NCBI RefSeq assembly: GCF_003918875.1
Contig: NW_025767371.1
Location: forward strand, 310,001-374,000
Length of the DNA: 64,000 bases
Direction of reading: 5' to 3'
From: Haliotis rubra
Taxonomy: Eukaryota
Part shown: in pieces, positions 1,865-59,600 of the stretch
How positions within the stretch are numbered: position 1 is the stretch's first letter
Layout of the letters: every line of letters begins with the position of its first letter
Translations under genes and position numbers: made by a program
The notes under the pieces: generated by a model
Database searches by the model: none
What the model saw: only the letters and a program-made list of their open reading frames with translations
What the model was told of the DNA's origin: nothing

Positions 1865-2874
1865 AGGCCAAGGGCTTCTCCACGGGTGTCGCCAAGGTTA
1901 TTGCTCGTGCTCATCGAGTCTCCACAAGATCACTCTATGATGATAAGTGGGTTTCTTTTGAGAAGTTTTGTGCACAGAAGTCCAAGGACCCATTGAAGGC
2001 TTCTCCTCAGTTTATAGCAGAGTTCCTTCTCTTTCTTCGGAAGTCCCGGCGTCTCAAGGGCAACACTATAGGAACTTATTTATCGGCTCTTAACTCCGTT
2101 CTGGCGGTCAAGTGCGACAAAAAGATTTCCAAGGTGCCAGAACTCATCGCCGTCCTCAAAGCGTTTAAGCTGGAGGACCAGAAGGCAAAGCTCCGTCCTC
2201 CGGCTTGGGACCTAAACGTCGTTCTTCGTCATCTGAGAGGTCCCCCTTATGAGCCCTTGGACACGGCTTCTTTTGAGAACCTCTCCAGGAAGACAGCTTT
2301 TCTCTCTGGCCCTGGACAGAGCTAGGGTTAGTGAGATTTCACCAGGGTGCGTTCTTGGTCCGGCATGGTTCATCTCGGACTGCTTTGGGATCTCGTGGCC
2401 AAGAACCAGCTGCGGGACTCCATCCCTCCTTTGTCTTCCATTCTAGGACCTCACGACGCTGAGGAACAGCTGCTTTGTCCCGTGAGGGCACTTAAGATTT
2501 ATATTGCCAAGTCATCTTCCAGGAGGCAGTCTCGTAAGAGACTGTTCATCCCGTTGTCTTCTGTGGCCAAAGGTGAAGTTAATAAGAATACGCTTGCGCT
2601 CTGGCTCCGTACTACCATCCTGACCGCCTACGATGCGCAAGATCTGCCTCATCCTACAGCCACTAATCCGCATGAGATTAGGGCTCTGGCATCCACCATG
2701 GCTCTCCACAGAAACTGCACCGTTCCAGCCATCATGGAGGGTTGTTTTTGGAAGTCCTCTACTGTCTTCGCTAGTCATTACCTGCGGGATTTGGCCGTCG
2801 AGGACGTGGAAGGTCTTCAATCGTTTGGTCCACTGGTGGTTGCTCAGCAACTCACCCATCCTACCGCCCATTAG
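1696..2874 (+). pseudogene. DIRS tyrosine recombinase (frameshifted around 2300-2350)
   Basis: N-terminal STRSLYDDKW..F..FC segment, WDLNVVL, RVSEI (shifted frame), LCPVRALKIY, HEIRALAST, W, FASHY. This gives the R..H-x-x-R..W..Y catalytic pattern. Confidence 0.92.
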
Positions 2875-3495
2875 GTAACTACTTCTTCTTACCTTCTGGT
2901 CTTCAGGTTAACTTACACTCTGGGTGTATTTGTTTTCCTTAGGGTTGCCTTTAGTCACTATCTGTCTCCTGTTCAGAGGCCTCCTCGCGACAGTCTGGCG
3001 ATTCAGTAGTTTCTTCTGGTTTTCCCTTGGCATGTGGGTTTTCGTGGGGACGGTCCTCTGGAGCCCGACACCGCCGTCCTACTGTCGAATCCATATGCAT
3101 AAGACCTATGGTAAGGTAAGTTAAAAATTTATTAAAATCTAAATATTTTAGATATTTAAATACTTACCTTACCATAGGGCGGTAACTCCCTCCCAACGCT
3201 GGATGCTCCTCCCCTCTCTGGGCTCTTTGGACCTGGTCAGTAAAAGTGATTTTGGATGGACCGCGCTTGCGCGGGAGGGGAGATCACGTCACTTCCGTTG
3301 CCTGTACACTCGTCGATACACGAGGTGGCCGTTCTACAGAATGGCGAATCAACGACTGTCTGATCTCTTTAAGCGGAGCTTGAGGTAATATGCATAAGAC
3401 CTATGGTAAGGTAAGTATTTAAATATCTAAAATATTTAGATTTTAATAATACAGTATATACTGTCAGTGCTTTTTGACTTAGGGTAATCTGTGAC

Positions 3496-3904
3496 CCGCC
3501 GTCCAACCGTGGGATAAGTGCAAATCGTGAGATAGGATAAGTTTAAAAATTTGAAAATTTTAATATAAATTGTACATTTATATACTTATCCTATCTCACG
3601 GGATGGATGCCCACCCAGCCTCCCCTCTACTCAGATTACGACGTATAACTGCCATTGGCTCCAAGAAGAGAATGATCACTCTGAGGTAGTCACGTGGGTA
3701 GACAGGGGAACGTGCTGCACACTTAGCCTGGGACTAGGGACCTGTCCTATAAGGAGAGCAGCCTGGGGAACACAGGGGTATGGACAAGAGAGGCCTACTG
3801 GAACAGTTCTCATTCGTTCCACTCAGCGTCGAAGCAAGAGAGAGAAGTGCAAATCGTGAGATAGGCTAAGTATATAAATATACTATTTAAGTTAAAATTT
3901 TCAA
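3496..3904 (+). mobile_element. 3' terminus (ICR plus right terminal repeat) of a second, different DIRS family
   Basis: aagtgcaaatcgtgagatagg(a/c)taagt at 3516 and 3845; 3551-3600 is an imperfect reverse complement of ~3855-3904. Same layout and same ccgccgtcc and ctcccctct flanking motifs as the element ending at 3450. Confidence 0.75.
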
Positions 3905-4051
3905 TTCTAAACACCTTCAGGAAGAACTAGTGATTTTCTTGTGGACTACTACCTAGGTAGATCACAACACTACTGCTGCTCAAATGGAAACACAAATTAA
4001 TGAAAAGACTCAGATGTTTGAGTTCTGTGAGGTTGTATATCTCTATTACAG

Positions 4052-7000
4052 AGCTGTCATTATGGCCAGACTTTGATGACAACATTGACAGAGGATCAGA
4101 GAGCCCCAGGTCTACATCATCAGTTGGACTTCCCTTCCGGAGGTACTTACACCTGAAACGAGCAGAAACTGAGGGATGTTAATTTGGACTCTGCAAATAA
4201 ACCTGTAGGGAATCCAGCTTAGAATTGGTTCCCAGTATAGCCTGTGCCATGTGTCGTGGATCACTGTCCATAACATCAGTTACTGGGTTACCTGTGCATG
4301 TGAGGTGAGGTGAGGTGAAATTGGGTTTAACGTCGTGCTTGAGAATATTTCACTCATATGACAACGTGCATGCGTGTGTATGTGTGTGTGCAGCTGCTTG
4401 TACTAGCCCAGACTTAAGCTGGTTTTATAGTGTTAGCCCACTGAGATACCATGCCTCAGCTTCTCCGGGCGGACGCTCTAACCACTACGCCACGGAGGCG
4501 GTTACCTGTGCATGTGGGCAGTGGGAGAACCTATTGGTGAAAGCGTTTGCTCATCGCCATAGACGCTGCGTCCCCCGCCGATGTATTGCTGGAATATTGC
4601 TAAAAGCGGCATAAAAAATACTCACTCTCACACCTGTGGACATCTTGGTTAGAATTTGTCTTCAGCAACGCCTAGGCATGTCTTAAGAAATGACAAGCAG
4701 GTGGTCAGACTGGGTGATTGGGTTGTGTCATTGTATCCCAGTCAGAGATTGAGGTTGAAGTGATTCACTGGACTGTCTGGTTGAGATTTACAGATCAGTG
4801 TCTTTCAGATGAACATAGGCATGTGGTGTTAAACATCAAACACATGAACAGCATCGGAAACTCATTTTTCCATGACATTGTGATGTTCAATGGTGTAAGA
4901 TGGTGTACATCAGTATAGTAGATATTCTAATGATGAAGTTCTGTTTTGTGAGCTTATTTCCTGCTTGATGACAGTGTCCCTCTGTTCTCACTAGGTTGTT
5001 GTCCAGGGCAGGCAGCCAGGGAGATGGTGACCGGTCACTCTACAGGGGCAGCCAGGGAGATGGTGACCGGTCACTCTACAGGGGGGAGCCTGGACAGGGT
5101 GTGGCAGGCAGCAGTAGGCGACCGGTCAGTCCACAGTGGCAGTCTCTCTGGGCTCGAGGTGTTCGAGGAGAGATCTCTCAAGCGGGAGAGACTCAAGGTA
5201 AAGCAGTAAACTAAGGTTGTGTGACACCTGGAATCTGGAATCTCACAAGCAATATGTTGTGTTAGTAAGATATCATGACTTCGTCTTTGGTTTCTTCCCA
5301 GGATCTGGTAACAACGGCAGTAACTCGGATGCGAATGTGGCCCGTCAGTTCGGTGTTTGACCAGTGGCTAGAGTTCACAGCCAGACAGAGGGAGCTTAAG
5401 TCACTGTCGTCACGGTTACAGCAACTGCATGACCACACCACTCTGGTCATCTTCCTCCATGACTGGAAGACCCAGCATGCTGACATGGTCAAGGCTAACA
5501 CCCACTGTGTAAGGCTTTCTTCACTACTTCGTGTAGCTTCAAGTAAAACCTTTACAGAAATTATGACAGAGGCACAAGTACCAAAAGTCCGAGTTGAGTT
5601 GATGAGAGCGGCAGATAGATGATAGGTCATGTGTCTGCAGTTTTGCATCTGTGTTATGTGTCGTGAAATCTTCTTTAAGGGAGACATTTCACAAATTCAT
5701 AAGTACTGATATTGATAAAAAATAGGAGGTATTACTGCAGTTAAACGTCTGAGGCCCAAACAGGTCACTAAGGCAGGATGGTCTTCCATTCTTGTGGCTC
5801 AATTCAATTATGAAACACTGAACTCAAATAAAATCTTGAATGATCACAGTGATCGGAACGTCGTCATGTCAATCCAGCAAATCCTGTTTTGTTCATTACT
5901 TTAAACAAGCTTGAGGTAGTGTCCACCTATTCTGGCCTGCAGTGAACTTAGTGTTTAAGGTAATGGTACAGTTACAGTAGGTGTGATAACAGTGAGAAGT
6001 CGGGAAGGATGATAGATCCTGATCATGTAGTGTCACTTGAATCCTGTTTGTGTAGAACAACGTCCTGATGAGAAAGTCTGTGCGAGCTCTGGCAGAGTAC
6101 AGGCAGCGACGTGGTGACAAGAAGAAGTTATCCGACCTTGCTGGACGCTACAACCAGCTCATTGTCTACAAGCAGTACTTCCCACTCTGGCTAGCAAAGG
6201 TAAGGAGTAAGACAGAACATTTCCTCATGAAGAAGCTTACGTGTTTGGCAGTATTAGAGCCATTATCAAATGTGAGTGTCTGTTATTGGGAAGCTAATGA
6301 AGTCATTGGATGTCAAATGAGCCTATACTTGCCTCTTAATACCTCCTGTCTGGTTGTATGGTCATGTATTCGTATCGGGTCTAGTTTATTGAACAAGGTT
6401 GGATGTCACTCTGGGTTATTTATTTCTACAGACTCAGGACCGACAGCACCAACACAACATCCTCCACTTGTGGTCCAACACCACGCCTGAAGAGCAGAAG
6501 TTACTTCCCTTAGAACGGAGTCTGACACGACAGTTCTCCCGACGGACACTGCGACTCTGCTATGCCATCTGGTCACTCAAGTTCCAGTTTGCATCCAAAA
6601 TTAAACATGCCTACCATTCAGGACTACTCAGGAGGTGGGTGCAGTAGAATTTCTTGGATGCATTGAGAGTGGAGGGGTGTGGGGGTGGCCTAGTGGTTAA
6701 AGTGTTCGCTAGTCCGAAGATCAGGTTCAATTCCCCACACAGGTACAATGTGTGAAGGCCATTTCTGGTGTCCCTTGCTGTGATATTGCTGGAATATTTC
6801 TAAAAGCAGCATAAAACCATACTCACTAGAGTGGATGGGGAGGGTATACGAGGGTCTGTGAGGTACATAGACCTAGTGAGCGGAAGAGAATGCTGCTGAG
6901 GGAGACTACAGTATCAGTTGTGATTGTGAGAAACAGCCTCCAGGATCTGTTTAATGTTTGTATGATCCACACCACTTACCTGGATCAGGTGGTCAACATC

Positions 7001-32619: not shown

Positions 32620-32772
32620 NNNNNNNNNNNNNNNNNNNNNNNNNNNNNNNNNNNNNNNNNNNNNNNNNNNNNNNNNNNNNNNNNNNNNNNNNNNNNNNNN
32701 NNNNNNNNNNNNNNNNNNNNNNNNNNNNNNNNNNNNNNNNNNNNNNNNNNNNNNNNNNNNNNNNNNNNNNNN
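32620..32772. other. Assembly gap (153 N)
   Basis: Run of N. Confidence 1.
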
Positions 32773-36556: not shown

Positions 36557-36853
36557 AACTGTGATAATGGTCTGCATGTACCAACAATAGTTCAACTGTG
36601 ACAATGGTTTGTATGTACCAACTATAGTTCAACTGTGACAATGGTCTGTATGTACCAACTATAGTTCAACTGTCGCAGTGGTAGAATAGTTTGTATGTAC
36701 AAACAATGGATCAGCTGTCACAACTGTGAAACACCCCACCCACCCACCCCTCTCTCACACACACACACACACACACACGCACACACATACATCAACCTGA
36801 GTGATGAATCTGAGAGACTTTACACAGCAGGAATGAACTGTATAGGTATTTAC

Positions 36854-39800
36854 TCATTCAATGACAGAATCCAGTTTCCAAACATACTGGAATGTTAACA
36901 AGATGGTGACCATGAGAATACCAAGGATGAATGTAAGTCCTGGGAATACATACTTCTTCCTCTTGTCTGGCTGGAGGTCAACAACCTCAGAGGTCACTTC
37001 CTGCACCTCACTACATGTTCCTTCAGAACTTTCTACCATCTTCCCGTCAGACTTTTCAGAAAATCTATAAAATGTATATGCATTTTGTCTGACCATGTCT
37101 GCAAGCTGTTGTGGAGTCCGCTGAACTCTACCTGATGCCAACTCCAAGATGGTGTGTACACTGAAAGGCTCGTTCCGCTTACAACAGTACTTCATTGTCA
37201 ACTTTGAGTTGTCCTCCAACAAGTTTGAACAATCAACTTTGAACATTGCTCGACGGTAAGATATTGATGAACCAGGGTAGTTGCTGATGAAGTCTGGGAA
37301 CTTTCCAGGAGCCTCGCTGGCCAGGAGTAGCCGCGTTGTCTCTATGTCATGTGATACACTGCTCAGCCAATCTCTTGGACATTCCGTATATGGGAGTTTC
37401 CAGGCATTACCTTGAAAGAGAAGATATTAGACCCTCTTAATGAAACATTCATACAAAACATCTTTCTGAAGAAAAAGCAGAATAATATTGTCCTTATGGA
37501 CAGGACTGACTGACTGACTGAGTTTAGTTTACGCCGCTTTTAGCAATATTCCAGCCATATCACGGCGGCTTATGGACAGGATTCACAAAGTGGCCTCTGT
37601 ATGCCAACACCTTAAAAAGGTAGAAGTGTGTTTGATAGCTTATGCTTAAAGGTCACATGCAATGTAAAACACAACTTTGGGGATTCTGATACATTTCGGT
37701 ATGGACTTGCAAAGTTGAAAAATAATGTGATGAACACACGCACGCACGCACGCACACACACAGACACACACAATATATCGAAGTTCAAACGATTCAATAA
37801 AAACTCTTTTCAACAGCTGTGCTGCGCTGCACTGCGCTCATGGCGCATGCGCAGTGAATAGGTTCACAGCTTGCAGCGGGGATTCCCGGATTATAAGGTC
37901 GTGAGCAGGGGTAGTCTAATCTTGGTTGTGTACAAAAACAACAAGTTGTAAATAATTTACTTGTTACATAAAAGAACCTTGTTAAGGATCTAGATCTACT
38001 CAGCTATGTGTCAATGAGGATGAGAATAAGGTGTCTTATCTGTCAATGAGATGTGTTACCTGTCAATGAGATGTGTTACCAGTCAAAGAGATGTGTTACC
38101 TATCAAGGAGATGCGTTATATGTCAATGAGATGCGTTATATGTCAATGAGATGTGTTACCTGTCAATGAGATGTGTTACCTGTCAAAGAGATGTGTTACC
38201 TGTCGATGAGATGTGTTACCTGTCAATGAGATGTGTTACCTGTCAATTGAGATGTGTTACCTGTCACAGAGATGTGTTACCTGCCAAAGAGAAGTGTTAC
38301 CTGTCAATGAGATGTGTTACCTGTCAATGAGATGTGTTACCTGTCAATTAGATGTGTTACCTGTCAAAGAGATGTGTTACCTGTTAATGAGATGTGTTAG
38401 CTGTCAATGAGATGTGTTACCTGTCAATGAGATCTGTAACCTGTCAATGAGATGTGTTACCTGTCACAGAGATGTGTTACCTGCCAAAAAGAAGTGTTAC
38501 CTGTCAAAGGGATGTGTTACCTGTCAATGAGATGTGTAACCTGTCAAGGAGATGTGTTACCTGTCAATGAGATGTGTTACCTATCAAGGAGATGTGTTAC
38601 CTGTCAGTGAGATGTGTTACCTGTCAATGAGATCTGTTACCTGTCAATTGAGATGTGTTACCTGTCTATGAGATGTGTTACCTGTCAAAGAGATGTTTTA
38701 CCTGTTGATGAGATGTGTTACCTGTCAATGAGATGTGTTACCTGTCAAAGACATGTGTTACCTGTCAATGAGATGTGTAACCTGTCAAGCAGATGTGTTA
38801 CCAGTCAAAGAGATGTGTTACCTATCAAGGAGATGCGTTATATGTCAATGAGATGCGTTATATGTCAATGAGATGTGTTACCTGTCAATGAGATGTGTTA
38901 CCTGTCAAAGAGATGTGTTACCTGTCGATGAGATGTGTTACCTGTCAATGAGATGTGTTACCTGTCAATTGAGATGTGTTACCTGTCACAGAGATGTGTT
39001 ACCTGCCAAAGAGAAGTGTTACCTGTCAATGAGATGTGTTACCTGTCAATGAGATGTGTTACCTGTCAATTAGATGTGTTACCTGTCAAAGAGATGTGTT
39101 ACCTGTTAATGAGATGTGTTAGCTGTCAATGAGATGTGTTACCTGTCAATGAGATCTGTAACCTGTCAATGAGATGTGTTACCTGTCACAGAGATGTGTT
39201 ACCTGCCAAAAAGAAGTGTTACCTGTCAAAGGGATGTGTTACCTGTCAATGAGATGTGTAACCTGTCAAGGAGATGTGTTACCTGTCAATGAGATGTGTT
39301 ACCTATCAAGGAGATGTGTTACCTGTCAGTGAGATGTGCTACCTGTCAATGAGATCTGTTACCTGTCAATTGAGATGTGTTACCTGTCTATGAGATGTGT
39401 TACCTGTCAAAGAGATGTTTTACCTGTTGATGAGATGTGTTACCTGTCAATGAGATGTGTTACCTGTCAAAGACATGTGTTACCTGTCAAAGAGATGTGT
39501 TACCTGTCAATGAGATGTGTTACCTGTCTATGAGATGTGTTACCTGTCAAAGAGATGTGTTTCCTGTCGATGAGATGTGTTACCTGTCAATGACATGTGT
39601 TACCTGTCAAAGACATGTGTTACCTGTCAAAGAGATGTGTTACCTGTCAATGAGATGTGTTACCTGTCAAAGAGATGTGTTACCTGTCAATGAGATGTGT
39701 TACCTGTCAATGAGATGTGTTACCTGTCAATGAGATGTGTTACCTGTCAAAGAGATGTGTTACCTGTCAAAGAGATGTTACCTGTTAAGGATATGTGTTA

Positions 39801-42800
39801 CCTGTCAATGAGATGTGGTACCTGCCAAAGAGATGTTACCTGTCAAAGAGATGTGTTACCTGTTAATGAGATCTGTTACCTGTCAATGAGATGTGTTACC
39901 TGTCAATGAGATGTGTTACCTGTCAAAGAGATGTTACCTGTGAAGGAGATGTGTTACCTATCAATGAGATGTGTTAGCTGTCAAAGAGATGTGTTACCTG
40001 TCAAAGAGATGTGTTACCTGTCAATGAGATGTGTTACCTGCCAAGGAGATATGTTACCTGTCAATTGAGATGTGTTACCTGTCAATGTGGTATGTTACCT
40101 GTCAATGAGATGTGTTACCTGTCAAAGAGATGTGTTACCTGTCAATGAGATGTGTTACCTGTCAATGAGATGTGTTACCTGCCAATGAGATGTGTTGCCT
40201 GTCAATGAGATGTGTTACCTGTCAAAGAGATATGTTACCTGTCAAGAGACATGTTACCTGTCAAGGATATGTGTTACCTGTCAATGAGATGTGTTACCTG
40301 TCAAAGAGATGTGTTACCTGTCAATGAGATGTGTTACCTGCCAATGAGATGTGTTACATGTCAAAGACATATGTTACCTGTCAAAGAGAAGTGTTACCTG
40401 TCAATGAGATGTGTTACCTGCCAATGAGATGTGTTACCTGTCAATGAGATGTGTTACCTGTCAATGAGATGTGTTACCTGCCAAAGAGATGTTACCTGTC
40501 AAAGAGATGTGTTACTTGTCAATGAGATCTGTTACCTGTCAATGAGATGTGTTACCTGTCAGTGAGATGTGTTACCTGTCAACGGGATGTGTTACCTGCC
40601 AATGAGATGTGTTACCTGTCAAAGAGATGTAACCTGTCAATGAGATGTGTTACCTATCAATGAGATGTGTTACCAGTCAATGAGATGTGTTACCTGTCAA
40701 AGAGATGTGTTACCTGCCAAAGATTTGTTACCTGTCAAGGAGATGTAGAATCCCATATCGCAGAATGCCTTCAAGTCTGTCGTTGTCTGCCTGTCTCCGC
40801 TAATACAAACTGGCGGTAGTTTGTCCTTGAACTCTGAGAGGATCCTCTGTGTTGTCTCCAGCTTACTCGTGTCACACAACACCAGGGGTATGTCCATGTC
40901 ACATGCCAGTTTCACCTGTCAAAATGTCACACACTACCTCAGCTGTGACACATTACATCACCTGTCACACAACACTTCATCACCTGTCACACAACACTGC
41001 ATCACCTGTCACACAACACTACATCACCTGTCACACAACACCTGTCACACACAACTACATCACTTGCCACACAACACTACACAACACTTCATGATCTGTC
41101 ACACAACACTACATCACACAACACTTCACCACCTGTCACACAACACTACATCACCTGTCACACAACACTACATCACACAACACTTCAAGACCTGTCACAA
41201 AACACTTCATGACCTGTCACACAACACTACATCACACAACACTAGATCACCTGTCACACAACACTACATCACCTGTCACACAACACCTGTCACACACAAC
41301 TACATCACTTGCCACACAACACTTCATGATCTGTCACACAACACTACATCACACAACACTTCACCACCTGTCACACAACACTACATCACCTGTCACACAA
41401 CACTACATCACACAACACTTCATGACCTGTCACAAAACACTTCATCACCTGTCACAGAACACTACATCACACAACACTACATCAACTGTCACACAACACT
41501 TCACCACCTGTTACACAACACTTCATCACCTGTCACACAACACTACATCACCTGTCACACAACACTACATCAAATGTCACAGAACACTACATCACCTGTC
41601 ACACAACACTGCATCATCTGTCACACAACACTACATCACCTGTCACACAACACTTCATCACCTGTCACAGAACACTACATCACCTGTCACAGAACACTAC
41701 ATCACCTGTGACACAACACCACAGCAACTGTCACACAACACTACATCACCTGTCACACAACACTACATCAACTGTCACACAACACTACATCATCTGTCAC
41801 ACAACACTACATCAACTGTCACACAACACTATATCACCTGTCACACAACACTACATCACCTGTCACAAAACACTACATCACACAACACTACACCAACTGT
41901 CACACAACACTACATCACCTGTCACACAACACTACATCACCTGTCACAACACTACATCACCTGTCACACAACACCTGTCACACACAACTACATCACTTGC
42001 CACACAACACTTCATGATGTCACACAACACTACATCACACAACACTTCACCATCTATCACAAAACACTACATCACCTGTCACACAACACTTCATCACACA
42101 ACACTACATCACCTGTCACACAACACTACATCACACAACATTTCACCATCTGTCACACAACACTACATCACCTGTCACACAACACTACACTACATGTCAC
42201 ACAGCTCACACTATTCTCACCACATAACCTAACTGTCTTACCTGGGCTCTGAACATCTCCCTCCGAGAGTCTGTATAATTCCTCTCCAGCCCGATCTCAC
42301 CCAGGGCCACACACTGAGGGTGAGATAGGAGGTCACGCAGTTGCTGTACAGTTGTCTCCCCTTTCCATGAACTTTCTTGAGTGGGGTGGATGCCTTGTAA
42401 GCATTTACAAACATATCATGAGAGTTATGATCACAGAATCAACCGTCCCTCCAAATCAACCACTTTTTCTCAAACTAAAACTGGCTGTAGATTTCTTTCA
42501 GTCTGATTTTCTAAGATGTATATATAGTTTTGTTTAAATTTCCCATGTATACACAAACATCAAAGTAACTGAAAAAAATAATTATGATAACTTTGATCAG
42601 TTTTCTAAAATGAATGAAACACACATTCATCTTCCTTCAACACAATAGAATATATCGAAAGTTCTACACAAAATCTGGCATGACTTTCAATTGAAGTTTT
42701 CAATTTGTTTACACTGACAGCTTCTTCTGTCTGGCAATTTGAGAGATGTTTATTCAGCCCAACATGCAGTTTGAGTATATTGTAGAGCATGGTCAAACGT

Positions 42801-45800
42801 TGAAAAATAATTTCCATAAACCAGCTGTTATCCTGAGAATAGCCTACGAAGTATCTACAGTTTTGTCATTTCAAATTGATCATTGATTTATGTTCTGATT
42901 GAATTGCAATATTGTCATCAGAATATTCCCGATTCCTGTTCAGGGCCTAAGGTGAATGCAGTGTGGCCCTTGACAACACCCACCAGCGGTGAAGTAGATG
43001 ATCCCAGGGAAGCTGTCGGCCAGGGCCTTAGCCTTCATGGCCTGTCTCACCGTCAGTGTCTTCACCACAACCTTCTCTACACCTGGAACACAACGTCCAT
43101 CTTGTCAAAACATGAGATTACGATAGAGTTGACAACAAAGTACTATCTTCGATGAAGCAGTCAAGAAAGTCACTCTTTGATGGAGGAGACAAGATAGTGA
43201 CTCTTTGATGGAGGAGACAAGAAAGTGACTCTTTGATGGAGGAGACAAGAAAGTGACTCTTTGATGGAGGAGACAAGAAAGTGACTCTTTGATGGGGGGA
43301 GATAAGAAATTGACTCTCTTTGATGGAGAGACAAGAAAGTGACTCTTTGATGGAGGAGACAAGAAAGTGACTCTTTGATGGAGGAGACAAGAAAGTCACT
43401 CTTTGATGGAGGAGACAAGATAGTGACTCTTTGATGGAGGAGACAAGAAAGTGACTCTTTGATGGAGGAGACAAGAAAGTGACTCTTTGATGGAGGAGAC
43501 AAGAAAGTGACTCTTTGATGGGGGAGATAAGAAAGTGACTCTCTTTGATGGAGAGACAAGAAAGTGACTATTTTTGATGGAGGAGACAAGAAAGTGACTG
43601 TCTTTGATGGAGGAGATAAGAAAGTGACTCTCTTTGATAGAGAGACAAGAAAGTGACTATCTTTGATTGAGAAGATAAGAAAGCGACTGTCTTTGATTGA
43701 GTGACAACAAAGTGACTCTTTGATGGAGGAGACAAGAAAGTGACTGTCTTTGATGGAGGAGACAAGAAAGTTACTCTTTAATGGAGGAGATAAAAAGTGA
43801 CATAAATGGACTTCACACTTTGTAACCATGTGGGGAATCAAACCTGGGTCTTCGGCGTGACGAGCAAACGCTTTAACCACTAGGCAACCCCACCGCCCCC
43901 ATTCAGAAAGAGAGTTGATGAAGAGCATTAAGATAACAAAGCCGTCTCAAAAGAAAATAGAAGTTACAGTAAGAATTGTAAACATTGTGCAGTTCAAACA
44001 GTATAAGGATTTGTATTTTCCGACTGAACCACCTAACATCTGATATAGAAACTGATATACTGGGCGCTGTGGGAGAGCTTGCTAAGGCGCCAGGCTAGTG
44101 ATCCAGCGAGGTTGAGGTGTCGGGATCCAGCCCATCCATGACCGGGTGTAAAAACCTTAGAGTCAACTTTGTGTGCAGACTCTTTCAGTGTTGTCACAAC
44201 CCCTAGTGTACAGTACACAACCCTGGGCACTTAAAAGAACCCACGAATCCGTTGGTATTTGACCAGATGGTGGCCACATGAATATGTGCAAACACCTAAT
44301 TGTGGGTACAGCAACATGCAGTGAACTTGGACAAAGTACTGTGACTATGTGTCCCAGTCCACCCAGCTGTGAATGGGTACCTCGTTAGGATGAGAAAGCC
44401 ACAATAACTCGGTGCGCCTAGTGGCTGCAAGAGTTGTATACTCCCCAGGGAGTTGAGTTTGATAATCCGATGTGCCGTTGAGATTGACATCCAATGATCG
44501 AGGGAAAAAATACCAGCGCCTTGAGCATGCACTAGTGCGTGGATATGTGCGCTATATAAATATCCTGTAATAATAAATATAATAATAATATATACAGAGG
44601 TCATGACAAGAGTATGTTTCAACATGGATTATGCTATATAAATATCCTGTAATAATAAATATAATAATAATATATACAGAGGTCATGACAAGAGTATGTT
44701 TCAAGATGGATTATTTACTGTATGAAGAATAAGCACACTGTATTCAGTGGTACTAGATCTATAACATGAATAAACATTGTGCTTAGGGAGACTGTATTAG
44801 GAATATACATTGTATTTAGTGAGCCCTACATATTATTATGTGATTATTGGGGCTTACAATTGTACCTGGATAAATCTTAAATCCAAAGTGTCAGTATGTT
44901 TTTACTGTGGTGTCAATGATATTTAACATACATACCAGATAGGAAAGCTCGTTTGATGACTTCGTTGACATCCTTCTTTGCAGTGAAACCAGGATCAACA
45001 AGATAAGCTCCTGCATCTATCATGTGATACATTAACTCTGTTCTCTCTTTTGACATTGAAACCACAGACTCAACACATTCGGAAAGACAAAACACTGTCC
45101 CTTCCTCATTTTTTCTCCATTTTGATGTGACACGTTTCTGCATATTCTCGGGCTTTTTGACTGAAAGCTCCTTTCCTTTGAGTAACCTGAAGAAAATAGA
45201 TACCGTACAACAAGTTGAGTATGTGAGTATGTCATGTGAGTGAATGGGCGAGAGTGTCTGTTCATTGTCTTGACCGTGTCTTAAAGCCCCATTCATGTGC
45301 ATTTTCCTGTTTCTGGGTATTCATGTTTTGGTAATTGGATGGAGAAAAAGCTAATTGTTTTTGGTTCTGCAAAAAGTTATCTGAATATGTTGGCAGGTAA
45401 ACAGTTCCACTTGTCTTCAGTGTAGTAATTGAACAATTATTCACATTTTTTGCGGTAAATACAAACAAGGAAAATACTTTTATTCAGATATTTCCTCCCA
45501 CCTGACATTATGTTGCTGACTTTGTAAACTATTTAAAACAAATTTAAAACAGAAAGTTGGACGTGCTTCAACATTCCCTTACATGCCATCCATCTGTAAC
45601 ACCTCTTTTGTGAGGGTCTTGGGCACCACCACCTCTGCACACTCCTTGGACTTGCCATGCTTGTCCACATGTATGTACACCTGGATGCTGGGATCTAGGC
45701 ACATGTACTCCTTGAGGTACAGGGGGCTCACAGACTTGTCAACATTCACTGAAGTCAGTAGAAATAGTCCAATACAGTCATTGTACAAGGATTAATCAGT

Positions 45801-53627: not shown

Positions 53628-56600
53628 TCATTCAATGACAGAATCCAGTTTCCAAACATACTGGAATGTTAACAAGATGGTGACCATGAGAATACCAAGG
53701 ATGAATGTAAGTCCTGGGAATACATACTTCCTCCTCTTGTCTGGCTGGAGGTCAACAACCTCAGAGGTCACTTCCTGCACCTCACTACATGTTCCTTCAG
53801 AACTTTCTACCAACTTCCTGTCAGACTTTTCAGTAAATCTATAGAATGTATACGTATTTTGTCTGACCATGTCCGCGAGCTGTTGTGGAGTCCGCTGAAC
53901 TCTACCCGATGCCAACTCCAAGATGCTGTGTAAACTAAGTGGCTCGTTCCGCTTACAACAGTACTTCATTGTCAACTTTGAGCTGTCCTCCGACAAGTTA
54001 CAACCATCAACTTTGAACACTGCTTGATGGTGAGATCTTGATGAACCAGCGTAGTTGCCGATGAAGTCGGGGTACTTTCCAGGAGCCTCGCTGGCCAGGA
54101 TTAGCCTCATTGTCTCTATGTCACGTGATACACTGCTCAGCCAATCTCTTGGACATCCCTTATATGGGCTAGTCCAGGCATGTCCTTGAAAGAAAAGACA
54201 TTAGATCATCTGAATTAAATACTGAAGAAAAAGCAGGATTATATTTTCCTCTATGGACATAAAGTCACAAAGTGACAACTGTATGACAAGGGCTAAAACG
54301 GTAGAAGTAGGTTTGATTCCTTATTTTTGTTGTAACTTGAGTAGGTGAACAATTTCTTGAAGTGTACTATGTATCATGCAGAAACATGAAGTATACATCC
54401 TGTACAATCTTCACTTTGTTTCAATTATTCTTACATTCATACTCTATTCAATGCCATTTGCACTGGCGACTTGAACCCCCTTCCCTAACTTTATGTGTAG
54501 GCAATAGTTTGAAGCTAGTAAAGCCCTCTTCACAGCTAGAAGGTCATAACTATGTACACGTTTTCAAAAACCTATAAAGCTGTATTGACTAGGCTTTTGT
54601 ATGTCTGTAGTAAACTTCCACTCACTCACTCAAAGAGAAAGAAACACACCTTGGGGCTACTGAGAATGGGACAATAAGATGTATTACCAGTGTATCAAAT
54701 AAGGCCCGTCCAACCGCCCAAGACAGGCTAGATTTCTAACGGACGGTCTAAATTTACAGCTAGCCAGCCCAATGGTCTGGTACAAATTTTAGATGTTCCA
54801 TACACCTGAGTAAATTCACCATATTTGGTCTGGTTAAATCCACTTGGGCAGGTAACATTTTGAACTTACCAGCCTTGATGTCTGGCTTATTTCATACACT
54901 GGTATTACCTGTCAAAGAGATGTGCTACCTGTCAAAAAGATCTGTTACCTGCCAAGGAGATGTGTTACCTGTCAAAGAGGTGTGTTACCTGTCAAAGAGA
55001 TGTGTTACCTGCCAAAGAGATGTTACCTATCAATGAGATGTGTTACCTTTCAAAGAGATGTGTTACCTGCCAAGGAGATGTGTTACCTGTCAAAAAGAGG
55101 TGTTACCTGCCAAGTAGATGTGTTACCTGCTAAGTAGATGTGTTAACTGTCAAAGAGTGTGTTACCTGCCAAGGAGATGAGTTACCTTTCTAGGATCCAG
55201 AGATGTGCTACTTGTCAAAACGGTGTGTTACCTGTCAAAGAGGTGTGTTACCTGCCAAGGAGATGTGTTACATGTCAAAGAGGTGTGTTACCTGCAAAGA
55301 AGATGTGTTACCTGTCAAAGAGATGTGTTACCTTTCTAGGATCCAGAGATGTGTTACTTGTCAAAACGGTGTGTTACCTGTCAAAGAGATGTGTTATCTG
55401 CCAAGGGGACGTGTTACCTGCAAAGGAGATGTGTTACCTGTCAAACAGGTGTGTTACCTACTAAGGAGATGTGTTATCTTTCTAGGATCCAGAGATGTGT
55501 TACCTCTCAAAGAGATGTGTTACCTGCCAAGGAGATGTTCTACCTTTTACCTGTCAAGGAGATGTAGAATCCCATGTCATAGAATGCCTTCAAGTCTGTC
55601 GTTGTCAGCCTGTCTCCGCTAATACAAACTGGCGGTAGTTTGTCCTTGAATTCTGAGAGGATCCTCTGTGTTGTCTCCAGCTTACTCGTGTCACACAACA
55701 CCAGGGGTATGTCCATGTCACATGCCTGTTTCACCTGTCAAAATGTCACACAACACTACATCACCTGTCACACAACACTACATCAACTGTCACACAGTGC
55801 ATCACCTGTCACACAACACTACATCACCTGTCACACAGCTCTATATCACCTGTCACACAACACTACATCACCTGTCACACAACACTACATCACATGTCAC
55901 ACAGCTCTATATCACCTGTCACACAACACTAAATCACCTGTCATACAACATTATATCACCTGTCACACAACACTACATCACCTGTCACACAGCTCTATAT
56001 CACCTCTCACACAACACTACATCACATGTCACACAGCACTATATCACCTCTCACAGAACACTACATCAACTGTCACACAACACTACATCACCTGTCACAC
56101 AGCACTAAATCACCTCTCACAGAACACTACATCAACTGTCACACAACACTACATCACCTGTCACACAGCTCTATATCACCTCTCACACAACACTACATCA
56201 CATGTCACACAGCACTATATCACCTCTCACAGAACACTACATCAACTGTCACACAACACTACATCACCTGTCACACAGCACTAAATCACCTCTCACAGAA
56301 CACTACATCAACTGTCACACAACACTACATCATCTGTCACACAATACTACATCAACTGTCACACAACACTACATCAACTGTCACACAACACTACATCACC
56401 TGTCACACAACATTATATCACCTGTCACACAACACTACATCACCTGTCATACAACATTATATCACCTGTCACACAACACTACATCACCTGTCATACAACA
56501 CTACATCACCTGTCACACAACACTACATCACATGTCACACAAGACTACATCACATGTCACACAGCTCTATATCACCTCTCACACAACACTACATCACCTG

Positions 56601-59600
56601 TCACACAACACTGCATCACCTATCGCAACACTACATCACCTGTCACACAACACTGCATCACCTATCACAACACTACACTGCATCACCTCACACAACACTG
56701 CATCACCTATTACAACACTACATCACCTGTCACACAACATTATATCACCTGTCACACAACACTGCATCACTTATCACAACACTACATCACCTGTCACACA
56801 ACACTACATCACCTGTCATACACCACTACATCACCTGTCGCACAACACTACATCACATGTCACACAGTACTATATCACCTGTCACACAACACTACATCAC
56901 CTGTCACACAACACTACATCACCTGTCACACAACACTACATCACCTATCACAACACTACATCACCTGTCACACAACACTACATCACCTGTCACAGAACAC
57001 TACATCAACTGTCACACAACACTACATCACCTGTCACACAACACTACATCAGCTATCACAACACTACATCACCTGTCATACAACATTATATCACCTGTCA
57101 CACAACACTACATCACCTGTCACACAGTACTACATCACCTGTCACACAACACTACATCACATGTCACATAGCTCTATATCACCTCTCACACAACACTACA
57201 TCACCTGTCACACAACACTACATCACCTGTCATACAACATTATATCACCTGTCACACAACACTACATCACCTGTCACACAACACTGCATCACCTGACATA
57301 CAACACTACATCACCTGTCACACAACACTACATCACCTGTCATACAATGCATCAACTGTCACACAACACTACATCACCTGTCACACAACACTACATCACC
57401 TGTCACACAGCACACACTATTCTCACCACATAACCTAACTGTCTCACCTGGGCTCTGAACATCTCCCTCTGAGTGTCTGTTTCAGCCTTTCCCAGCCCGA
57501 TCTCACCCAGGGCCACACACTGGGGGTGGGATAGGAGGTCACACAGTTGCTGTAGAGTTCTCTCCCCTTTCCATGAACTTTCTTTGGTGGGGTGGATGCC
57601 TTGTAAGCATTTACAAACATATCATGAGAATTCCAATCACATGTGCAACCATCCCTCCAAATCAACCCCCATTTATCAAACTAATACAGGCTAAGATATA
57701 TATAATTTGGTTTAAATTTTCTCATGTATACACAATCATCAAAGTAACTGCTCAACTGAAAAAAATAATAATTATGATAACTTTGATCAGTTTTCTAAAA
57801 TGAAGGAAACACATATTCATCTTCCTTCAACACATCTGTAAATATCTAAAGTTCTCCACAAAACCTGGCATGCCTTTCATTTGAAATTTTCAATTTGTTT
57901 ACACTCACAGCTTCTTCTGTCTGGCAATTTGAGAGATGTTTATTCAGCCCAACATGCAGTTTGAGTATATTGTAGAGCATGGTCAAACATTGAAAAATAA
58001 TTTCCATAAACCAGCTGTTATCCTGAGAAAAGCCTAAGAAGTATCTACAGTTTTGTCATTTCAAATTGATCATTGATTCATGTTCTGATTGAATTGCAAT
58101 ATTGTCATCAGAATATTCCCGATTCCTGTTCAGGGCCTAAGGTGAATGTAGTGTGGCCCTTGACAACACCCACCAGCGGTGAAGTAGATGATCCCAGGGA
58201 AGCTGTCGGCCAGGGCCTTAGCCTTCATGGCCTGTCTCACCGTCAGTGTCTTCACCACAACCTTCTCTACACCTGGAACACAACGCCCATCTTGTCAAAA
58301 CTTATTTGTTTGATCAGTATTCTAAAAGTCTATCAAAGCACTCTTATTAGAGTGTGGTTACTACTTATCCTACTTATTTACTGGCTTCATCACCAGTTCC
58401 ATTTGTAGTTCCTGGTCCCCAACTGGTCTCTTCAATTATGTACCACTTGTTTCAATTACATGCTGCTTATGTTAATCTGCTGTTTTGTCATAACATACCA
58501 TGTTATCTGATCTTTGCCCCAAAATACTATGTAATATTCTTCTCAACATTTGCTTGTAGTTACGTATAGCTTGATAACGGCCTAAGAATCTATATCAAAA
58601 TGTCGCTATATGCCATAAAAAAGAAGTTGTCATCAATAAAGTTGTATGCTTCATTTTGAACAGATACCTTTCTTTGATGGAGTAGACAAATAATACAGCT
58701 ACAATCAATCACAAATGTTTATTGGTTGTTTGATGGTTTGTCAATGAAGTCAGCCAGCCTGACCACCCGATCCTGTTAGTCACATCTTACGACAAGCATG
58801 GGTTACTGCATGAAGACCAATTCTAACCTGGATCTTCACGGGTCAAAACTTTACTGTATTAAGAATAAGCAAACTGTTTTCAGGGAGAGTGTCATAGGAA
58901 TAAACATTGTGCTCAGAGAGATTGTCATAGGAATAAACATTGTGCTCAGGGAGATTGTCATAGGAATAAACATTGTGTTCAGGGAGATTGTCATAGGAAT
59001 AAACATTGTGTTCAGGGAGATTGTCATAGGAATAAACATTGTGCTCAGAGAGATTGTCATAGGAGATTGTCATAGGAATAAACATTGTGCTCAGAGAGAT
59101 TGTCATAGGAATAAACATTGTGTTCAGGGAGATAGTCACAGGAATAAACATTGTGCTCAGAGAGGTTTTCTTAGGAATAAACATTGTGTTCAGGGAGACT
59201 GTCATAGGAATCAACATTGTGCTCAGGGAGATTGTTATAGGAATAAACATTGTGTTCAGGGAGATTGTTATAGGAATAAACATTGTGTTCAGGGAGACTG
59301 TCATAGGAACAAACATTGTGTTCAGGGAGATTGTCATAGGAATAAACATTGTGTTCAGGGAGACTGTTATAGGAATGAACATTCTGTTAAGGGAGATTGT
59401 TATAGGAATGAACATTGTGTTCAGGGAGATTGTCATTGGAATAAACATTGTGTTCAGGGAGACTATTATAGGAATGAACATTCTGTTAAGGTAGATTGTT
59501 ATAGAAATGAACATTGTGTTCAGGGAGATTGTCATAGGAATAAACATTGTGTTCAGGGAGACTGTCAAAAGAATGAGAATTGTGCTCAGGGAGACTCTAT

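What the first reader, a model, noticed from the sequence alone, without database searches (positions are those of the whole stretch)
38030..42205. An exon sandwiched between two satellites built from its own splice junctions
Seen: TatD-like exon 6 (40915-40732) has TTGACAG|GT at both its acceptor and its donor. Downstream lie ~135 copies of the donor junction (ACATCTCATTGACAG|GTAAC). Upstream, nearly the whole intron is ~55 copies of a UG-rich acceptor mimic (GATGTAGTGTTGTGTGACAG|GT), of which 13 nt also match the exon interior at 40870-40882. Most units contain CAG|GT, the signature of a recursive (zero-length-exon) splice site. The same two arrays flank the same exon in the paralog (54902-57412), so they predate the duplication and were retained. 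With the Dmrt case, two unrelated genes in 35 kb have splice-junction-seeded minisatellites. Inference: either a mutational process amplifies DNA at exon/intron borders, or the arrays act as splice decoys, ratchet points or hnRNP platforms.
Basis: partly seen in the sequence, partly recalled or inferred. Interest (0 to 1): 0.8.

Follow-up and report, generated by a model that had tools for sequence, protein, structure and literature searches.

The report
Splice-junction minisatellites flanking one exon
One coding exon of an abalone TatD-like gene sits between two long tandem repeats copied from its own splice junctions; this kind of repeat ("mirage" minisatellite) is already known, and the RNA on hand shows only the real splice sites in use.

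Summary
Exon 6 (40915-40732, minus strand) of a TatD-like gene is followed by about 136 copies of a 20-nt unit, made of its last 15 bases plus GTAAC. It is preceded by about 59 copies of a GU-rich 22-nt unit ending in ACAG|GTGA. The tandem paralog has the same two arrays (31 and 77 copies). A third, older paralog has the same exon borders and no arrays.

Spliced contigs from two RNA runs of a close relative join exon 5 to exon 6 to exon 7 at the authentic acceptor and the first donor. No array sequence is included. Within the arrays the AG|GT core is no better conserved than other unit positions. Copy numbers differ between the paralogs, and one array holds a 722-bp internal duplication with 548 exact bases.

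This fits junction-spanning "mirage" minisatellites (amphioxus; human F7 intron 7): tolerated, fast-changing by-products that are spliced out whole. Nothing supports decoy, ratchet or protein-platform roles, though rare events degraded by nonsense-mediated decay (NMD) cannot be excluded.

The scan had already found this class at about ten other genes of this genome. This is one more member, unusual only in hitting both sides of one exon.

The parts
40732..40915 (-). Exon 6 of TatD-like gene copy A (184 nt, phase 0 to phase 1). Acceptor is TTTTGACAG|GTGA, donor is CTTGACAG|GTAAC.
   Evidence: Pfam TatD_DNase positions 115-175, E 0.011. RNA contigs of X1 and X3 cover 40731-40918 and then continue into the neighbouring exons.
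38032..40746 (-). Downstream (donor-side) array D_A: about 136 units of 20 nt, consensus GTAACACATCTCATTGACAG. The unit is the exon's last 15 nt plus the first 5 intron nt. The array fills 2700 of the 3321 nt of intron 6.
   Evidence: TRF. 115 CAGGT and 105 CAGGTAAC. Wrap-around alignment gives 135 units. Sizes.
40916..42203 (-). Upstream (acceptor-side) array U_A: about 59-61 units of 22 nt, consensus GTGATGTAGTGTTGTGTGACAG, GU-rich. The TRF array is 40950-42203, followed by two degenerate units and the real acceptor tract at 40916-40949. It fills 1288 of the 1326 nt of intron 5.
   Evidence: TRF, sequence, counts, wrap-around alignment, sizes.
40870..40882 (-). Exon-interior 13-mer GTGTTGTGTGACA (codons for V-L-C-D), identical to 13 nt of the upstream unit.
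   Evidence: exact match, 0 of 2000 shuffles and 0 of 277 background segments reach 13. The homologous codons are present in the array-free third paralog.
42242..42393 (-). Exon 5 of copy A (TatD motif GEIGLE); donor is CCCAG|GTAAGA.
   Evidence: Pfam TatD_DNase E 9.4e-6. The loose end of the RNA contigs matches this exon's end in its paralog-B form.
36854..37410 (-). Exon 7 of copy A (last coding exon, ends in a hydrophobic tail); acceptor is TTTCAAG|GTAAT.
   Evidence: The loose end of the X3 contig matches the start of exon 7 in its paralog-B form.
38032..39693 (-). Higher-order duplication inside D_A: two blocks offset by 722 bp, 96.8% identical over 940 nt, with 548 nt exact (38069-38616 equals 38791-39338). 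This marks recent array growth by unequal exchange.
55551..55734 (-). Exon 6 of paralog B; 6 differences from copy A; same TTGACAG|GT at both borders.
54905..55550 (-). Donor-side array of paralog B (D_B): about 31 units of 20 nt, more degenerate (76% matches); 20 units carry CAGGT.
55735..57413 (-). Acceptor-side array of paralog B (U_B): about 77 units of 22 nt with the same consensus as U_A. It fills almost all of the 1713-nt intron 5.

Best explanation
Both arrays are junction-spanning ('mirage') minisatellites.

**Origin (inferred).** A short tandem duplication that straddled the donor of exon 6 (15 exon nt plus GTAAC) was amplified by replication slippage and unequal exchange. A second duplication that straddled its acceptor did the same. 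This happened after the third paralog split off and before the A/B gene duplication.

**Later history.** Since then each array has gained, lost and homogenised units independently: 136 against 31 copies downstream, and 59 against 77 upstream.

**Splicing (shown only for a close relative's contigs).** The spliceosome uses the first donor and the last acceptor, the ones attached to the exon. The arrays are therefore removed whole as intron.

**Why this is expected.** It is the behaviour demonstrated for identical tandem 5' splice sites in the human F7 intron-7 VNTR. Any use of a repeat unit would bring in a premature stop and be degraded.

**Conclusion.** The arrays are tolerated by-products, not devices.
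For: **Anatomy.**

**The donor-side unit derives from the exon, not the reverse.**
- The exon end encodes Y-I-S-L-T-G, aligned to the TatD profile through position 175.
- It is homologous to the exon end of the array-free third paralog.

**The acceptor-side unit looks like a duplication joint.**
- It reads exon positions 34-46, then the acceptor G, then exon positions 1-4.
- A duplication spanning the acceptor would create exactly this joint.

**The third paralog** has the same exon borders but no arrays.

**RNA.**
- Contigs of X1 (306 nt) and X3 (316 nt) cover exactly the exon.
- They continue into sequences matching the end of exon 5 and the start of exon 7.
- No contig in the RNA runs carries donor-side units.

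**DNA run X9.** One contig spans the exon and both array flanks. Array words are 45-78 times deeper than the exon.

**No selection on the AG|GT core.**
- Substitution rates per unit position are flat in D_A.
- In the upstream arrays the +1 G is among the most variable positions (14-18%).

**Turnover.** Copy numbers and purity differ between paralogs that are about 7% diverged, and D_A holds a duplication with 548 nt exact.

**Decoy use would be unproductive.** Extension past the donor meets TGA after 11 codons, and each upstream unit begins GTG ATG TAG in frame.

**Literature.** Mirages: PMC3087553, PMC3902484. Selection of the first donor in the F7 VNTR: PMC1557585.
Against: - The RNA evidence is two assembled contigs from a related organism (about 96-97% identical). 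Their flanking exons are paralog-B-like. Contigs drop rare isoforms, and NMD would hide decoy products.
- The upstream array stops 35 nt short of the exon. Its derivation needs later deletions from a longer founding unit.
- GT-rich 22-mers about 70% similar to it exist at 30 or more other loci. The core GTGACAGGTGA recurs in tandem at two other contigs.
- The identical 9-10-mer (T)TTGACAGGT at both borders of the exon is not explained by this model.
- Why junctions are hit more often than chance is unknown.
Confidence: 0.8

Rival explanations
1. The arrays are functional splicing regulators. In this view the tandem pseudo-donors and pseudo-acceptors, or their UG-rich and CA/UCUC-rich units, bind U1 snRNP or hnRNP-type proteins (CELF, TDP-43, PTB, hnRNP L). 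They would tune exon 6 inclusion, splicing kinetics or transcript fate.
For: - 105 units carry a 9-mer identical to the real donor (CAG|GTAACA), which pairs with U1 over 7 contiguous positions.
- The unit compositions resemble known protein-binding motifs (my own knowledge, not tested).
- Both arrays are kept in both paralogs.
Against: - The splice-like core is not preferentially conserved.
- Copy number differs more than fourfold between paralogs, and D_B is decaying at 76% matches.
- The third paralog does without arrays.
- Only authentic junctions are seen in RNA contigs.
- The same class of array occurs at many unrelated genes of this genome, which points to a general mutational cause.
Confidence: 0.08
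2. The units are recursive (zero-length-exon) splice sites, so the two introns are removed stepwise.
For: - Most donor-side units read CAG|GTAAC.
- Splicing exon 6 to any unit would regenerate exactly the same donor.
- Such intermediates are sequence-identical to unspliced RNA, so short reads could not disprove them.
Against: - The units lack the long polypyrimidine tract of known ratchet points. About 8 of the 18 nt before the AG are pyrimidines in the donor-side unit, and the acceptor-side unit is G/U only.
- The introns are 1.3 and 3.3 kb, far below the long introns where recursive splicing is described (my own knowledge).
- The AG|GT is not specially conserved.
Confidence: 0.04
3. The arrays, above all the upstream GU-rich one, belong to a dispersed satellite or transposon-borne repeat family. 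They landed next to the exon, and the resemblance to the junctions is coincidence or later gene conversion.
For: - Thirty or more other loci hold arrays about 67-75% similar to the upstream array.
- Arrays on C2520 and C2455 share the core GTGACAGGTGA, C2520 with the same 22-nt period.
- Arrays with GACAGGTAAC exist on C91 and C2745.
Against: - Only the two paralogous copies are 79% identical or more. All others are at the level expected for GT-rich low-complexity repeats or for shared donor consensus.
- The donor-side unit contains 15 nt of conserved coding sequence.
- The upstream unit contains 13 nt of exon interior plus the exon's first 4 nt.
Confidence: 0.07

Closest known systems
Amphioxus 'mirage' minisatellites (Adh3, globins BflGb6/BflGb9, troponin C, PGBD5; PMC3087553, PMC3902484)
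   Same: - Tandem repeats whose unit spans an intron/exon boundary.
- Either the 5' or the 3' border of an exon can be hit.
- Many units keep AG/GT.
- Normal splicing is not disturbed.
- Arrays are unstable in length and evolve in concert.
   Different: - The host is a mollusc, not a cephalochordate.
- Both borders of one exon are hit.
- Units are short (20-22 nt) and copy numbers much higher (31-136, against 3-6 in the globins).
- The acceptor-side unit is a shortened derivative of the junction, not a plain copy.
Human F7 intron-7 37-bp VNTR (PMC1557585)
   Same: - The first element spans the exon/intron boundary.
- The authentic donor is followed by pseudo-donors of identical sequence.
- Only the most upstream site is used.
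   Different: - F7 has a handful of copies, while this donor array has about 136.
- Selection of the first donor was shown experimentally in F7. Here it rests on two RNA contigs of a relative.
Intron gain or alternative introns from tandem duplication of AG|GT segments (Rogers model; Zhuo et al. 2007 PNAS, cited from memory and in the reference list of PMC3488318)
   Same: Tandem duplication creates extra, potentially usable splice sites.
   Different: No new intron or exon is seen here. Both introns are older than the arrays, since the third paralog has the same positions.
Recursive splice sites / ratchet points (Drosophila Ubx and long vertebrate introns; my own knowledge)
   Same: A 3' AG sits directly next to a GT, giving CAG|GT.
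   Different: There is no polypyrimidine tract, the introns are short, the site is not conserved, and there are hundreds of tandem copies rather than single conserved sites.

Membership tests
Mirage (junction-spanning) minisatellite | The tandem-repeat unit contains both exon and intron bases of a working junction, and the authentic junction forms the edge unit (donor side). | tested here: met
   The TRF array 38032-40746 overlaps exon 6 by 15 nt. The unit is 15 exon nt plus GTAAC. The same holds in paralog B.
Mirage (junction-spanning) minisatellite | The same on the acceptor side: the unit contains the 3' intron end plus exon bases. | tested here: inconclusive
   The unit ends ACAG and begins GTGA, which is the exon's first 4 nt. 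It also holds 13 nt of exon interior. However, the regular array ends 35 nt before the exon, the unit is not a colinear copy of the junction, and similar GT-rich 22-mers exist elsewhere.
Mirage (junction-spanning) minisatellite | The repeats do not disturb normal splicing; only the authentic site is used. | tested here: met
   Spliced contigs in X1 and X3 join exon 5, exon 6 and exon 7 at the authentic sites. The limits are that these are contigs of a related organism and that rare isoforms cannot be seen.
Mirage (junction-spanning) minisatellite | Length instability and concerted evolution. | tested here: met
   Copy numbers are 136 against 31 and 59 against 77 in paralogs about 7% diverged. 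D_A holds a 722-bp internal duplication with 548 exact nt. Unit variants are array-specific, CATT against CTTT. Allelic polymorphism was not tested.
F7-type donor VNTR with silent pseudo-sites | The pseudo-donors are identical in sequence to the authentic donor, and the most upstream one is selected. | tested here: met
   89 or more units carry the same 9-mer CAG|GTAACA as the real donor. The RNA contig leaves the genome at 40732/40731, the first donor.
Recursive splice site (ratchet point) | A strong 3' splice site (long polypyrimidine tract plus AG) fused to a 5' splice site. | tested here: not met
   AG|GT is present, but the preceding 18 nt are only about 45% pyrimidine in the donor-side unit and G/U in the acceptor-side unit.
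Recursive splice site (ratchet point) | Evolutionary conservation of the site. | tested here: not met
   Per-position substitution rates show no sparing of AG|GT. The +1 G varies in 14-18% of upstream units.
Recursive splice site (ratchet point) | Saw-tooth nascent RNA, lariats or intermediate junction reads. | not testable with these tools
   Only contigs of older runs were available. Intermediates would also be identical in sequence to unspliced RNA.
Dispersed satellite / transposon-borne array | The same unit occurs at high identity at many unrelated loci. | tested here: not met
   Own-genome searches give hits of 79% or more only in the two paralogs. Other hits are 66-75%.
Reverse-complementary flanking repeats that drive back-splicing | Sequence-specific complementarity between the two flanking introns. 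| tested here: not met
   The U-D duplex energy is -53.6 kcal/mol, no better than dinucleotide shuffles (-57.3 +/- 4.8). It is stronger than pairs of unique intron pieces (-35 +/- 8), so the effect is compositional only. No back-splice contig was seen.

The most novel reading that the evidence does not exclude
Abalone genomes, like amphioxus, may have a process that makes or keeps minisatellites preferentially at exon/intron borders. This exon, hit on both sides, would be a clean case of it.

One candidate is my own idea and is untested. The junction unit is held constant by selection, so it acts as a seed that never decays. Arrays could then regrow from it after collapse, which would raise their steady-state frequency at junctions.

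Alternatively, the CAG|GT-type core itself may favour slippage or exchange. Tandem triplets of CAGGTAA give 16,324 matches in the genome, against 3,295 for the reversed motif. That count is by matches, not by arrays, so it is only suggestive.
Probability: 0.3. Interest if true: 0.6.

Novelty: new member of a known kind. Interest (0 to 1): 0.3.

Why it matters
On its own this is one more junction-spanning minisatellite. Its use is as a natural experiment. It offers 105 sequence-identical pseudo-donors behind a real donor, and dozens of pseudo-acceptors ahead of a real acceptor, around a single constitutive exon, in two paralogs with different copy numbers and a third with none. That makes it a convenient substrate for testing how the spliceosome picks the first of many identical sites.

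Together with the other cases in this genome, it can also be used to ask why junctions are favoured sites for minisatellites. The chimeric acceptor-side unit (exon interior joined to exon start) is a rare trace of how such an array was born.

Tried and rejected
**Searches that gave nothing or were cut short**
As the tool advised, I laid a part with fewer copies (40520-41140). Joints to exons 5 and 7 are therefore read from loose ends, not from listed joints.
I did not try to get more by other tools. The array-level test for donor-like motifs has no power: 1 of 22 random arrays carries CAGGTRA.
- Cross-species loci: the word search with the exon 7 protein (184 aa) gave no hit. Full-length relatives lie outside its length range, so this blank says nothing. 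The age of the arrays beyond the paralogs rests on run X9 only.
- Rfam gave no family in 36800-42500.

**Readings rejected**
- Inverted-repeat or circRNA reading: the complementarity between the arrays is compositional, not specific.
- Dispersed-family reading.

- The spliced protein model was not joined or searched as one sequence. Exons were scanned one by one by reference.
- No structure or complex prediction was relevant.
- The N run at 32620-32772 was left alone.
Full report
**Setting.** The window is contig C2481:310001-374000 of a 1.38-Gb genome. Earlier notes of this scan name it as blacklip abalone, Haliotis rubra. The finding lies in a TatD-like gene on the minus strand. That gene is present as two tandem copies: A at about 34.7-47.5 kb and B at about 48.1-62.9 kb.

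**The observation.** Tandem Repeats Finder (TRF) reports four arrays:
- 38032-40746: period 20, 136.1 copies, 88% matches.
- 40950-42203: period 22, 59 copies, 75% matches.
- Copy B, 54905-55538: period 20, 31 copies.
- Copy B, 55744-57413: period 22, 76.6 copies.

Between the two arrays of copy A lies a 184-nt open stretch, 40915-40732.

**The stretch is a real exon.**
- Its translation matches Pfam TatD_DNase positions 115-175 (E 0.011). The preceding exon matches positions 61-103 (E 9.4e-6). I scanned the exons one by one by reference; the joined spliced model was not built or searched.
- It differs at 6 of 184 positions between A and B. Unique intron sequence is about 93% identical.
- RNA contigs end at its borders (see the RNA section below).

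**The borders.** The acceptor reads TTTTGACAG|GTGA and the donor reads CTTGACAG|GTAAC, so TTGACAG|GT stands at both borders.

**The downstream array (D).**
- Its consensus unit, written from the splice point, is GTAACACATCTCATTGACAG. That is the exon's last 15 nt (one mismatch) plus the first 5 intron nt.
- The TRF array overlaps the exon by those 15 nt.
- In D_A, 115 units carry CAGGT and 105 carry CAGGTAAC. In D_B, 20 carry CAGGT.

**The upstream array (U).**
- Its consensus is GTGATGTAGTGTTGTGTGACAG in both copies.
- 34 units (U_A) and 45 units (U_B) carry CAGGT.
- The arrays fill 1288 of 1326 nt of intron 5 and 2700 of 3321 nt of intron 6 in copy A.
- The 13-nt identity between the U unit and the exon interior (40870-40882) is exact. 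It was never reached in 2000 shuffles or in 277 background segments.

The only reservation is that 'most units contain CAG|GT' is just over half for the upstream array.

**Which came first.**
- The exon end encodes Y-I-S-L-T-G, aligned to the TatD profile through position 175.
- A third, much older paralog lies 5.6 kb beyond the window on the other strand (C2481:379615-379785, 33% identity). It has the same exon borders and phases, with a homologous exon end (TTTTACTTCTTTGTACATG|GT).
- Its two flanking introns are about 1.1 kb and 0.4 kb and contain no such arrays.

So both introns and the coding sequence are older than the arrays, and the D unit was copied from the junction, not the reverse.

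**Origin of the U unit.**
- It reads as exon positions 34-46, then the acceptor's G, then exon positions 1-4, then four more bases.
- That order is the novel joint that a tandem duplication spanning the acceptor would create.
- The unit next to the exon still reads ...TGTGACA followed by TTTTGACAG|GTGA. The two TGACA direct repeats there could give the shorter unit by deletion.
- I infer a longer founding duplication of about 50 nt, shortened and then amplified. This is not shown.
- The third paralog has a TG-rich tract just before its acceptor, so a TG-rich intron end may also have contributed.

**Dynamics.**
- A and B are about 7% diverged in unique intron sequence.
- Their arrays differ in copy number (136 against 31; 59 against 77), in purity (88% against 76% matches) and in the dominant unit variant (CATT against CTTT).
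- D_A contains two blocks offset by 722 bp that are 96.8% identical over 940 nt, with 548 nt exact. Growth by unequal exchange is therefore recent.
- A wrap-around alignment of every unit to its consensus gives flat substitution rates across the D_A unit: 1-9% per position, apart from one polymorphic A/T site.
- In both U arrays the +1 G of the splice-like core is among the most variable positions (14-18%).
- Nothing suggests selection on the splice-like core.

**RNA.**
- The run search found no run on record as RNA. Four small runs of one study were guessed to be RNA, and larger runs are probably DNA. All are from 'organism A', which holds 0.30-0.45 of the words of exon 7. By my estimate that is about 96-97% identity, so a close relative or a divergent haplotype.
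On 40520-41140, runs X1 and X3 each give one contig that fits exactly 40731-40918 and then runs on into unlike sequence.
- Those loose ends match the end of exon 5 and the start of exon 7 in their paralog-B form.
- The 3-nt and 1-nt overhangs beyond the exon are bases shared by the intron ends and the neighbouring exons.
- These are therefore spliced transcripts that use the authentic acceptor and the first donor.
- No contig of the RNA runs lies on the D units. One 52-nt contig of depth 4 lies on U units at 92% identity and cannot be assigned.
- In run X9 a 249-nt contig spans the exon and both array flanks. Array words are 45-78 times deeper than the exon, so the relative has large arrays too. 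It also shares a variant unit type of D_B.
- Limits: contigs drop rare forms. Every decoy product would also carry a premature stop. Read-through past the donor meets TGA after 11 codons, a 20-nt extension shifts the frame, and every U unit starts GTG ATG TAG in frame.

**Is it a dispersed repeat?**
- Own-genome searches find matches of 79% or more only in the two paralogs.
- The D query has 66-73% matches at a few loci. These include arrays with the core GACAGGTAAC on C91 and C2745.
- The U query has 67-75% matches at 30 or more loci.
- The core GTGACAGGTGA recurs in tandem on C2455 and C2520, C2520 with the same 22-nt period.
- These similarities are what a shared donor consensus and GT-rich composition would give. 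I found no shared flanks. The transposon reading is unlikely for D and cannot be fully excluded for U.

**Genome context.**
- A random 200-kb sample of contig C1 holds 22 minisatellites covering 9.4% of its bases.
- At that density I expect about 0.06-0.09 junction-spanning arrays among the roughly 14 junctions of this gene. Two are seen, both on one exon.
- Three tandem CAGGTAA motifs occur 16,324 times in the genome, against 3,295 for the reversed motif. This counts matches, not arrays, and a few giant arrays dominate it.
- Earlier notes of this scan report the same class at Dmrt in this window. They also report it at sulfatases, RyR, a cell-surface gene, Sema5, GALM, LRRK2-like, RTCA and ABCB10. 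Those notes estimate that junctions are hit three to five times more often than chance. I did not test those claims.

**Comparison with what is known.**
[quoted passage not shown] They are reported for Adh3, globins, troponin C and PGBD5. Either border can be hit, many units keep AG/GT, and splicing is normal (PMC3087553; PMC3902484).
- The human F7 intron-7 VNTR begins with an element spanning the exon/intron border. Its identical pseudo-donors stay silent because the most upstream site is selected (PMC1557585).
- Abalone introns are known to hold long polymorphic minisatellites (PMC6905558). I found no paper describing mirages in molluscs.

**Other readings tested.**
- Recursive splicing: the units lack a polypyrimidine tract, the introns are short, and the core is not conserved.
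- Pairing between the two arrays across the exon: the duplex energy (-53.6 kcal/mol for about 100-nt pieces) is no better than dinucleotide shuffles (-57.3 +/- 4.8). It is stronger than pairs of unique intron pieces (-35 +/- 8). The GU-rich and AC-rich arrays are therefore complementary by composition only.
- Rfam finds nothing.

**Verdict.** The object is one more member of a known class, unusual in hitting both borders of one exon with very high copy numbers. The best-supported mechanism is birth by junction-spanning duplication, growth by slippage and unequal exchange, and silent removal from the first donor and last acceptor. The identical 9-10-mer at both borders of the exon, and the excess of such arrays at junctions in this genome, remain unexplained.

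Noticed in passing
window 40916-40925 and 40723-40741: The acceptor tract TTTGACAG|GT is identical over 10 nt to the common CTTT variant of the donor-side unit. The two arrays also share the 8-mer TGACAGGT. Chance seems unlikely, and exchange between the arrays or with the acceptor region is possible.
   Followed up: partly
L013 (G000:C2481:378115-381285), exon at 1499-1671; array at 2651-2831: A third, divergent paralog of the gene on the opposite strand, just beyond the window. It has the same exon-6 borders, no junction arrays, and a TG-rich tract before the acceptor. Its last exon holds a 54-nt repeat in 3.4 copies that lies in an open reading frame, apparently coding.
   Followed up: partly
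window 37446-38024 versus 54220-54904: The unique part of intron 6, between the donor-side array and exon 7, shows no similarity between paralogs A and B, although the sequence on both sides aligns. It was probably replaced by an insertion or deletion.
   Followed up: no
G000:C1:3976927-3981300: An array of about 39-nt units, more than 100 copies, each containing CATCAG|GTAAAAAC. It may be another donor-type junction array. No gene context was examined.
   Followed up: no
L015 (C91:1026000-1034000) 2764-5132 and L018 (C91:1006000-1013000) 3480-3778: Two inverted copies of one locus, each with a 21-nt array (112 and 12 copies) of the unit CACAGGGACAGGTAACACAAC and similar downstream flanks. In L015 a possible short exon with an acceptor lies directly upstream of the array.
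   Followed up: partly
L019-L038 (20 stretches of 10 kb from contig C1): Minisatellites (period 8 or more, at least 3.5 copies) cover 9.4% of a random 200-kb sample. There are 22 arrays, several with 40-113 copies.
   Followed up: yes
window 43146-43801 and 58875-59594: A 28-nt array of 23 copies ends about 60 nt before the exon 4 acceptor in copy A only. A different 33-nt array lies in copy B. Neither contains a junction. Both are covered by another note of the scan.
   Followed up: partly
window 42242-42393 versus 57448-57597: Exon 5 is only 91% identical between the paralogs, whereas exon 4 is 100% and exon 6 is 96.7%. The residues after the GEIGL motif differ (ERNYTDSRR against GKAETDTQR).
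   Followed up: no
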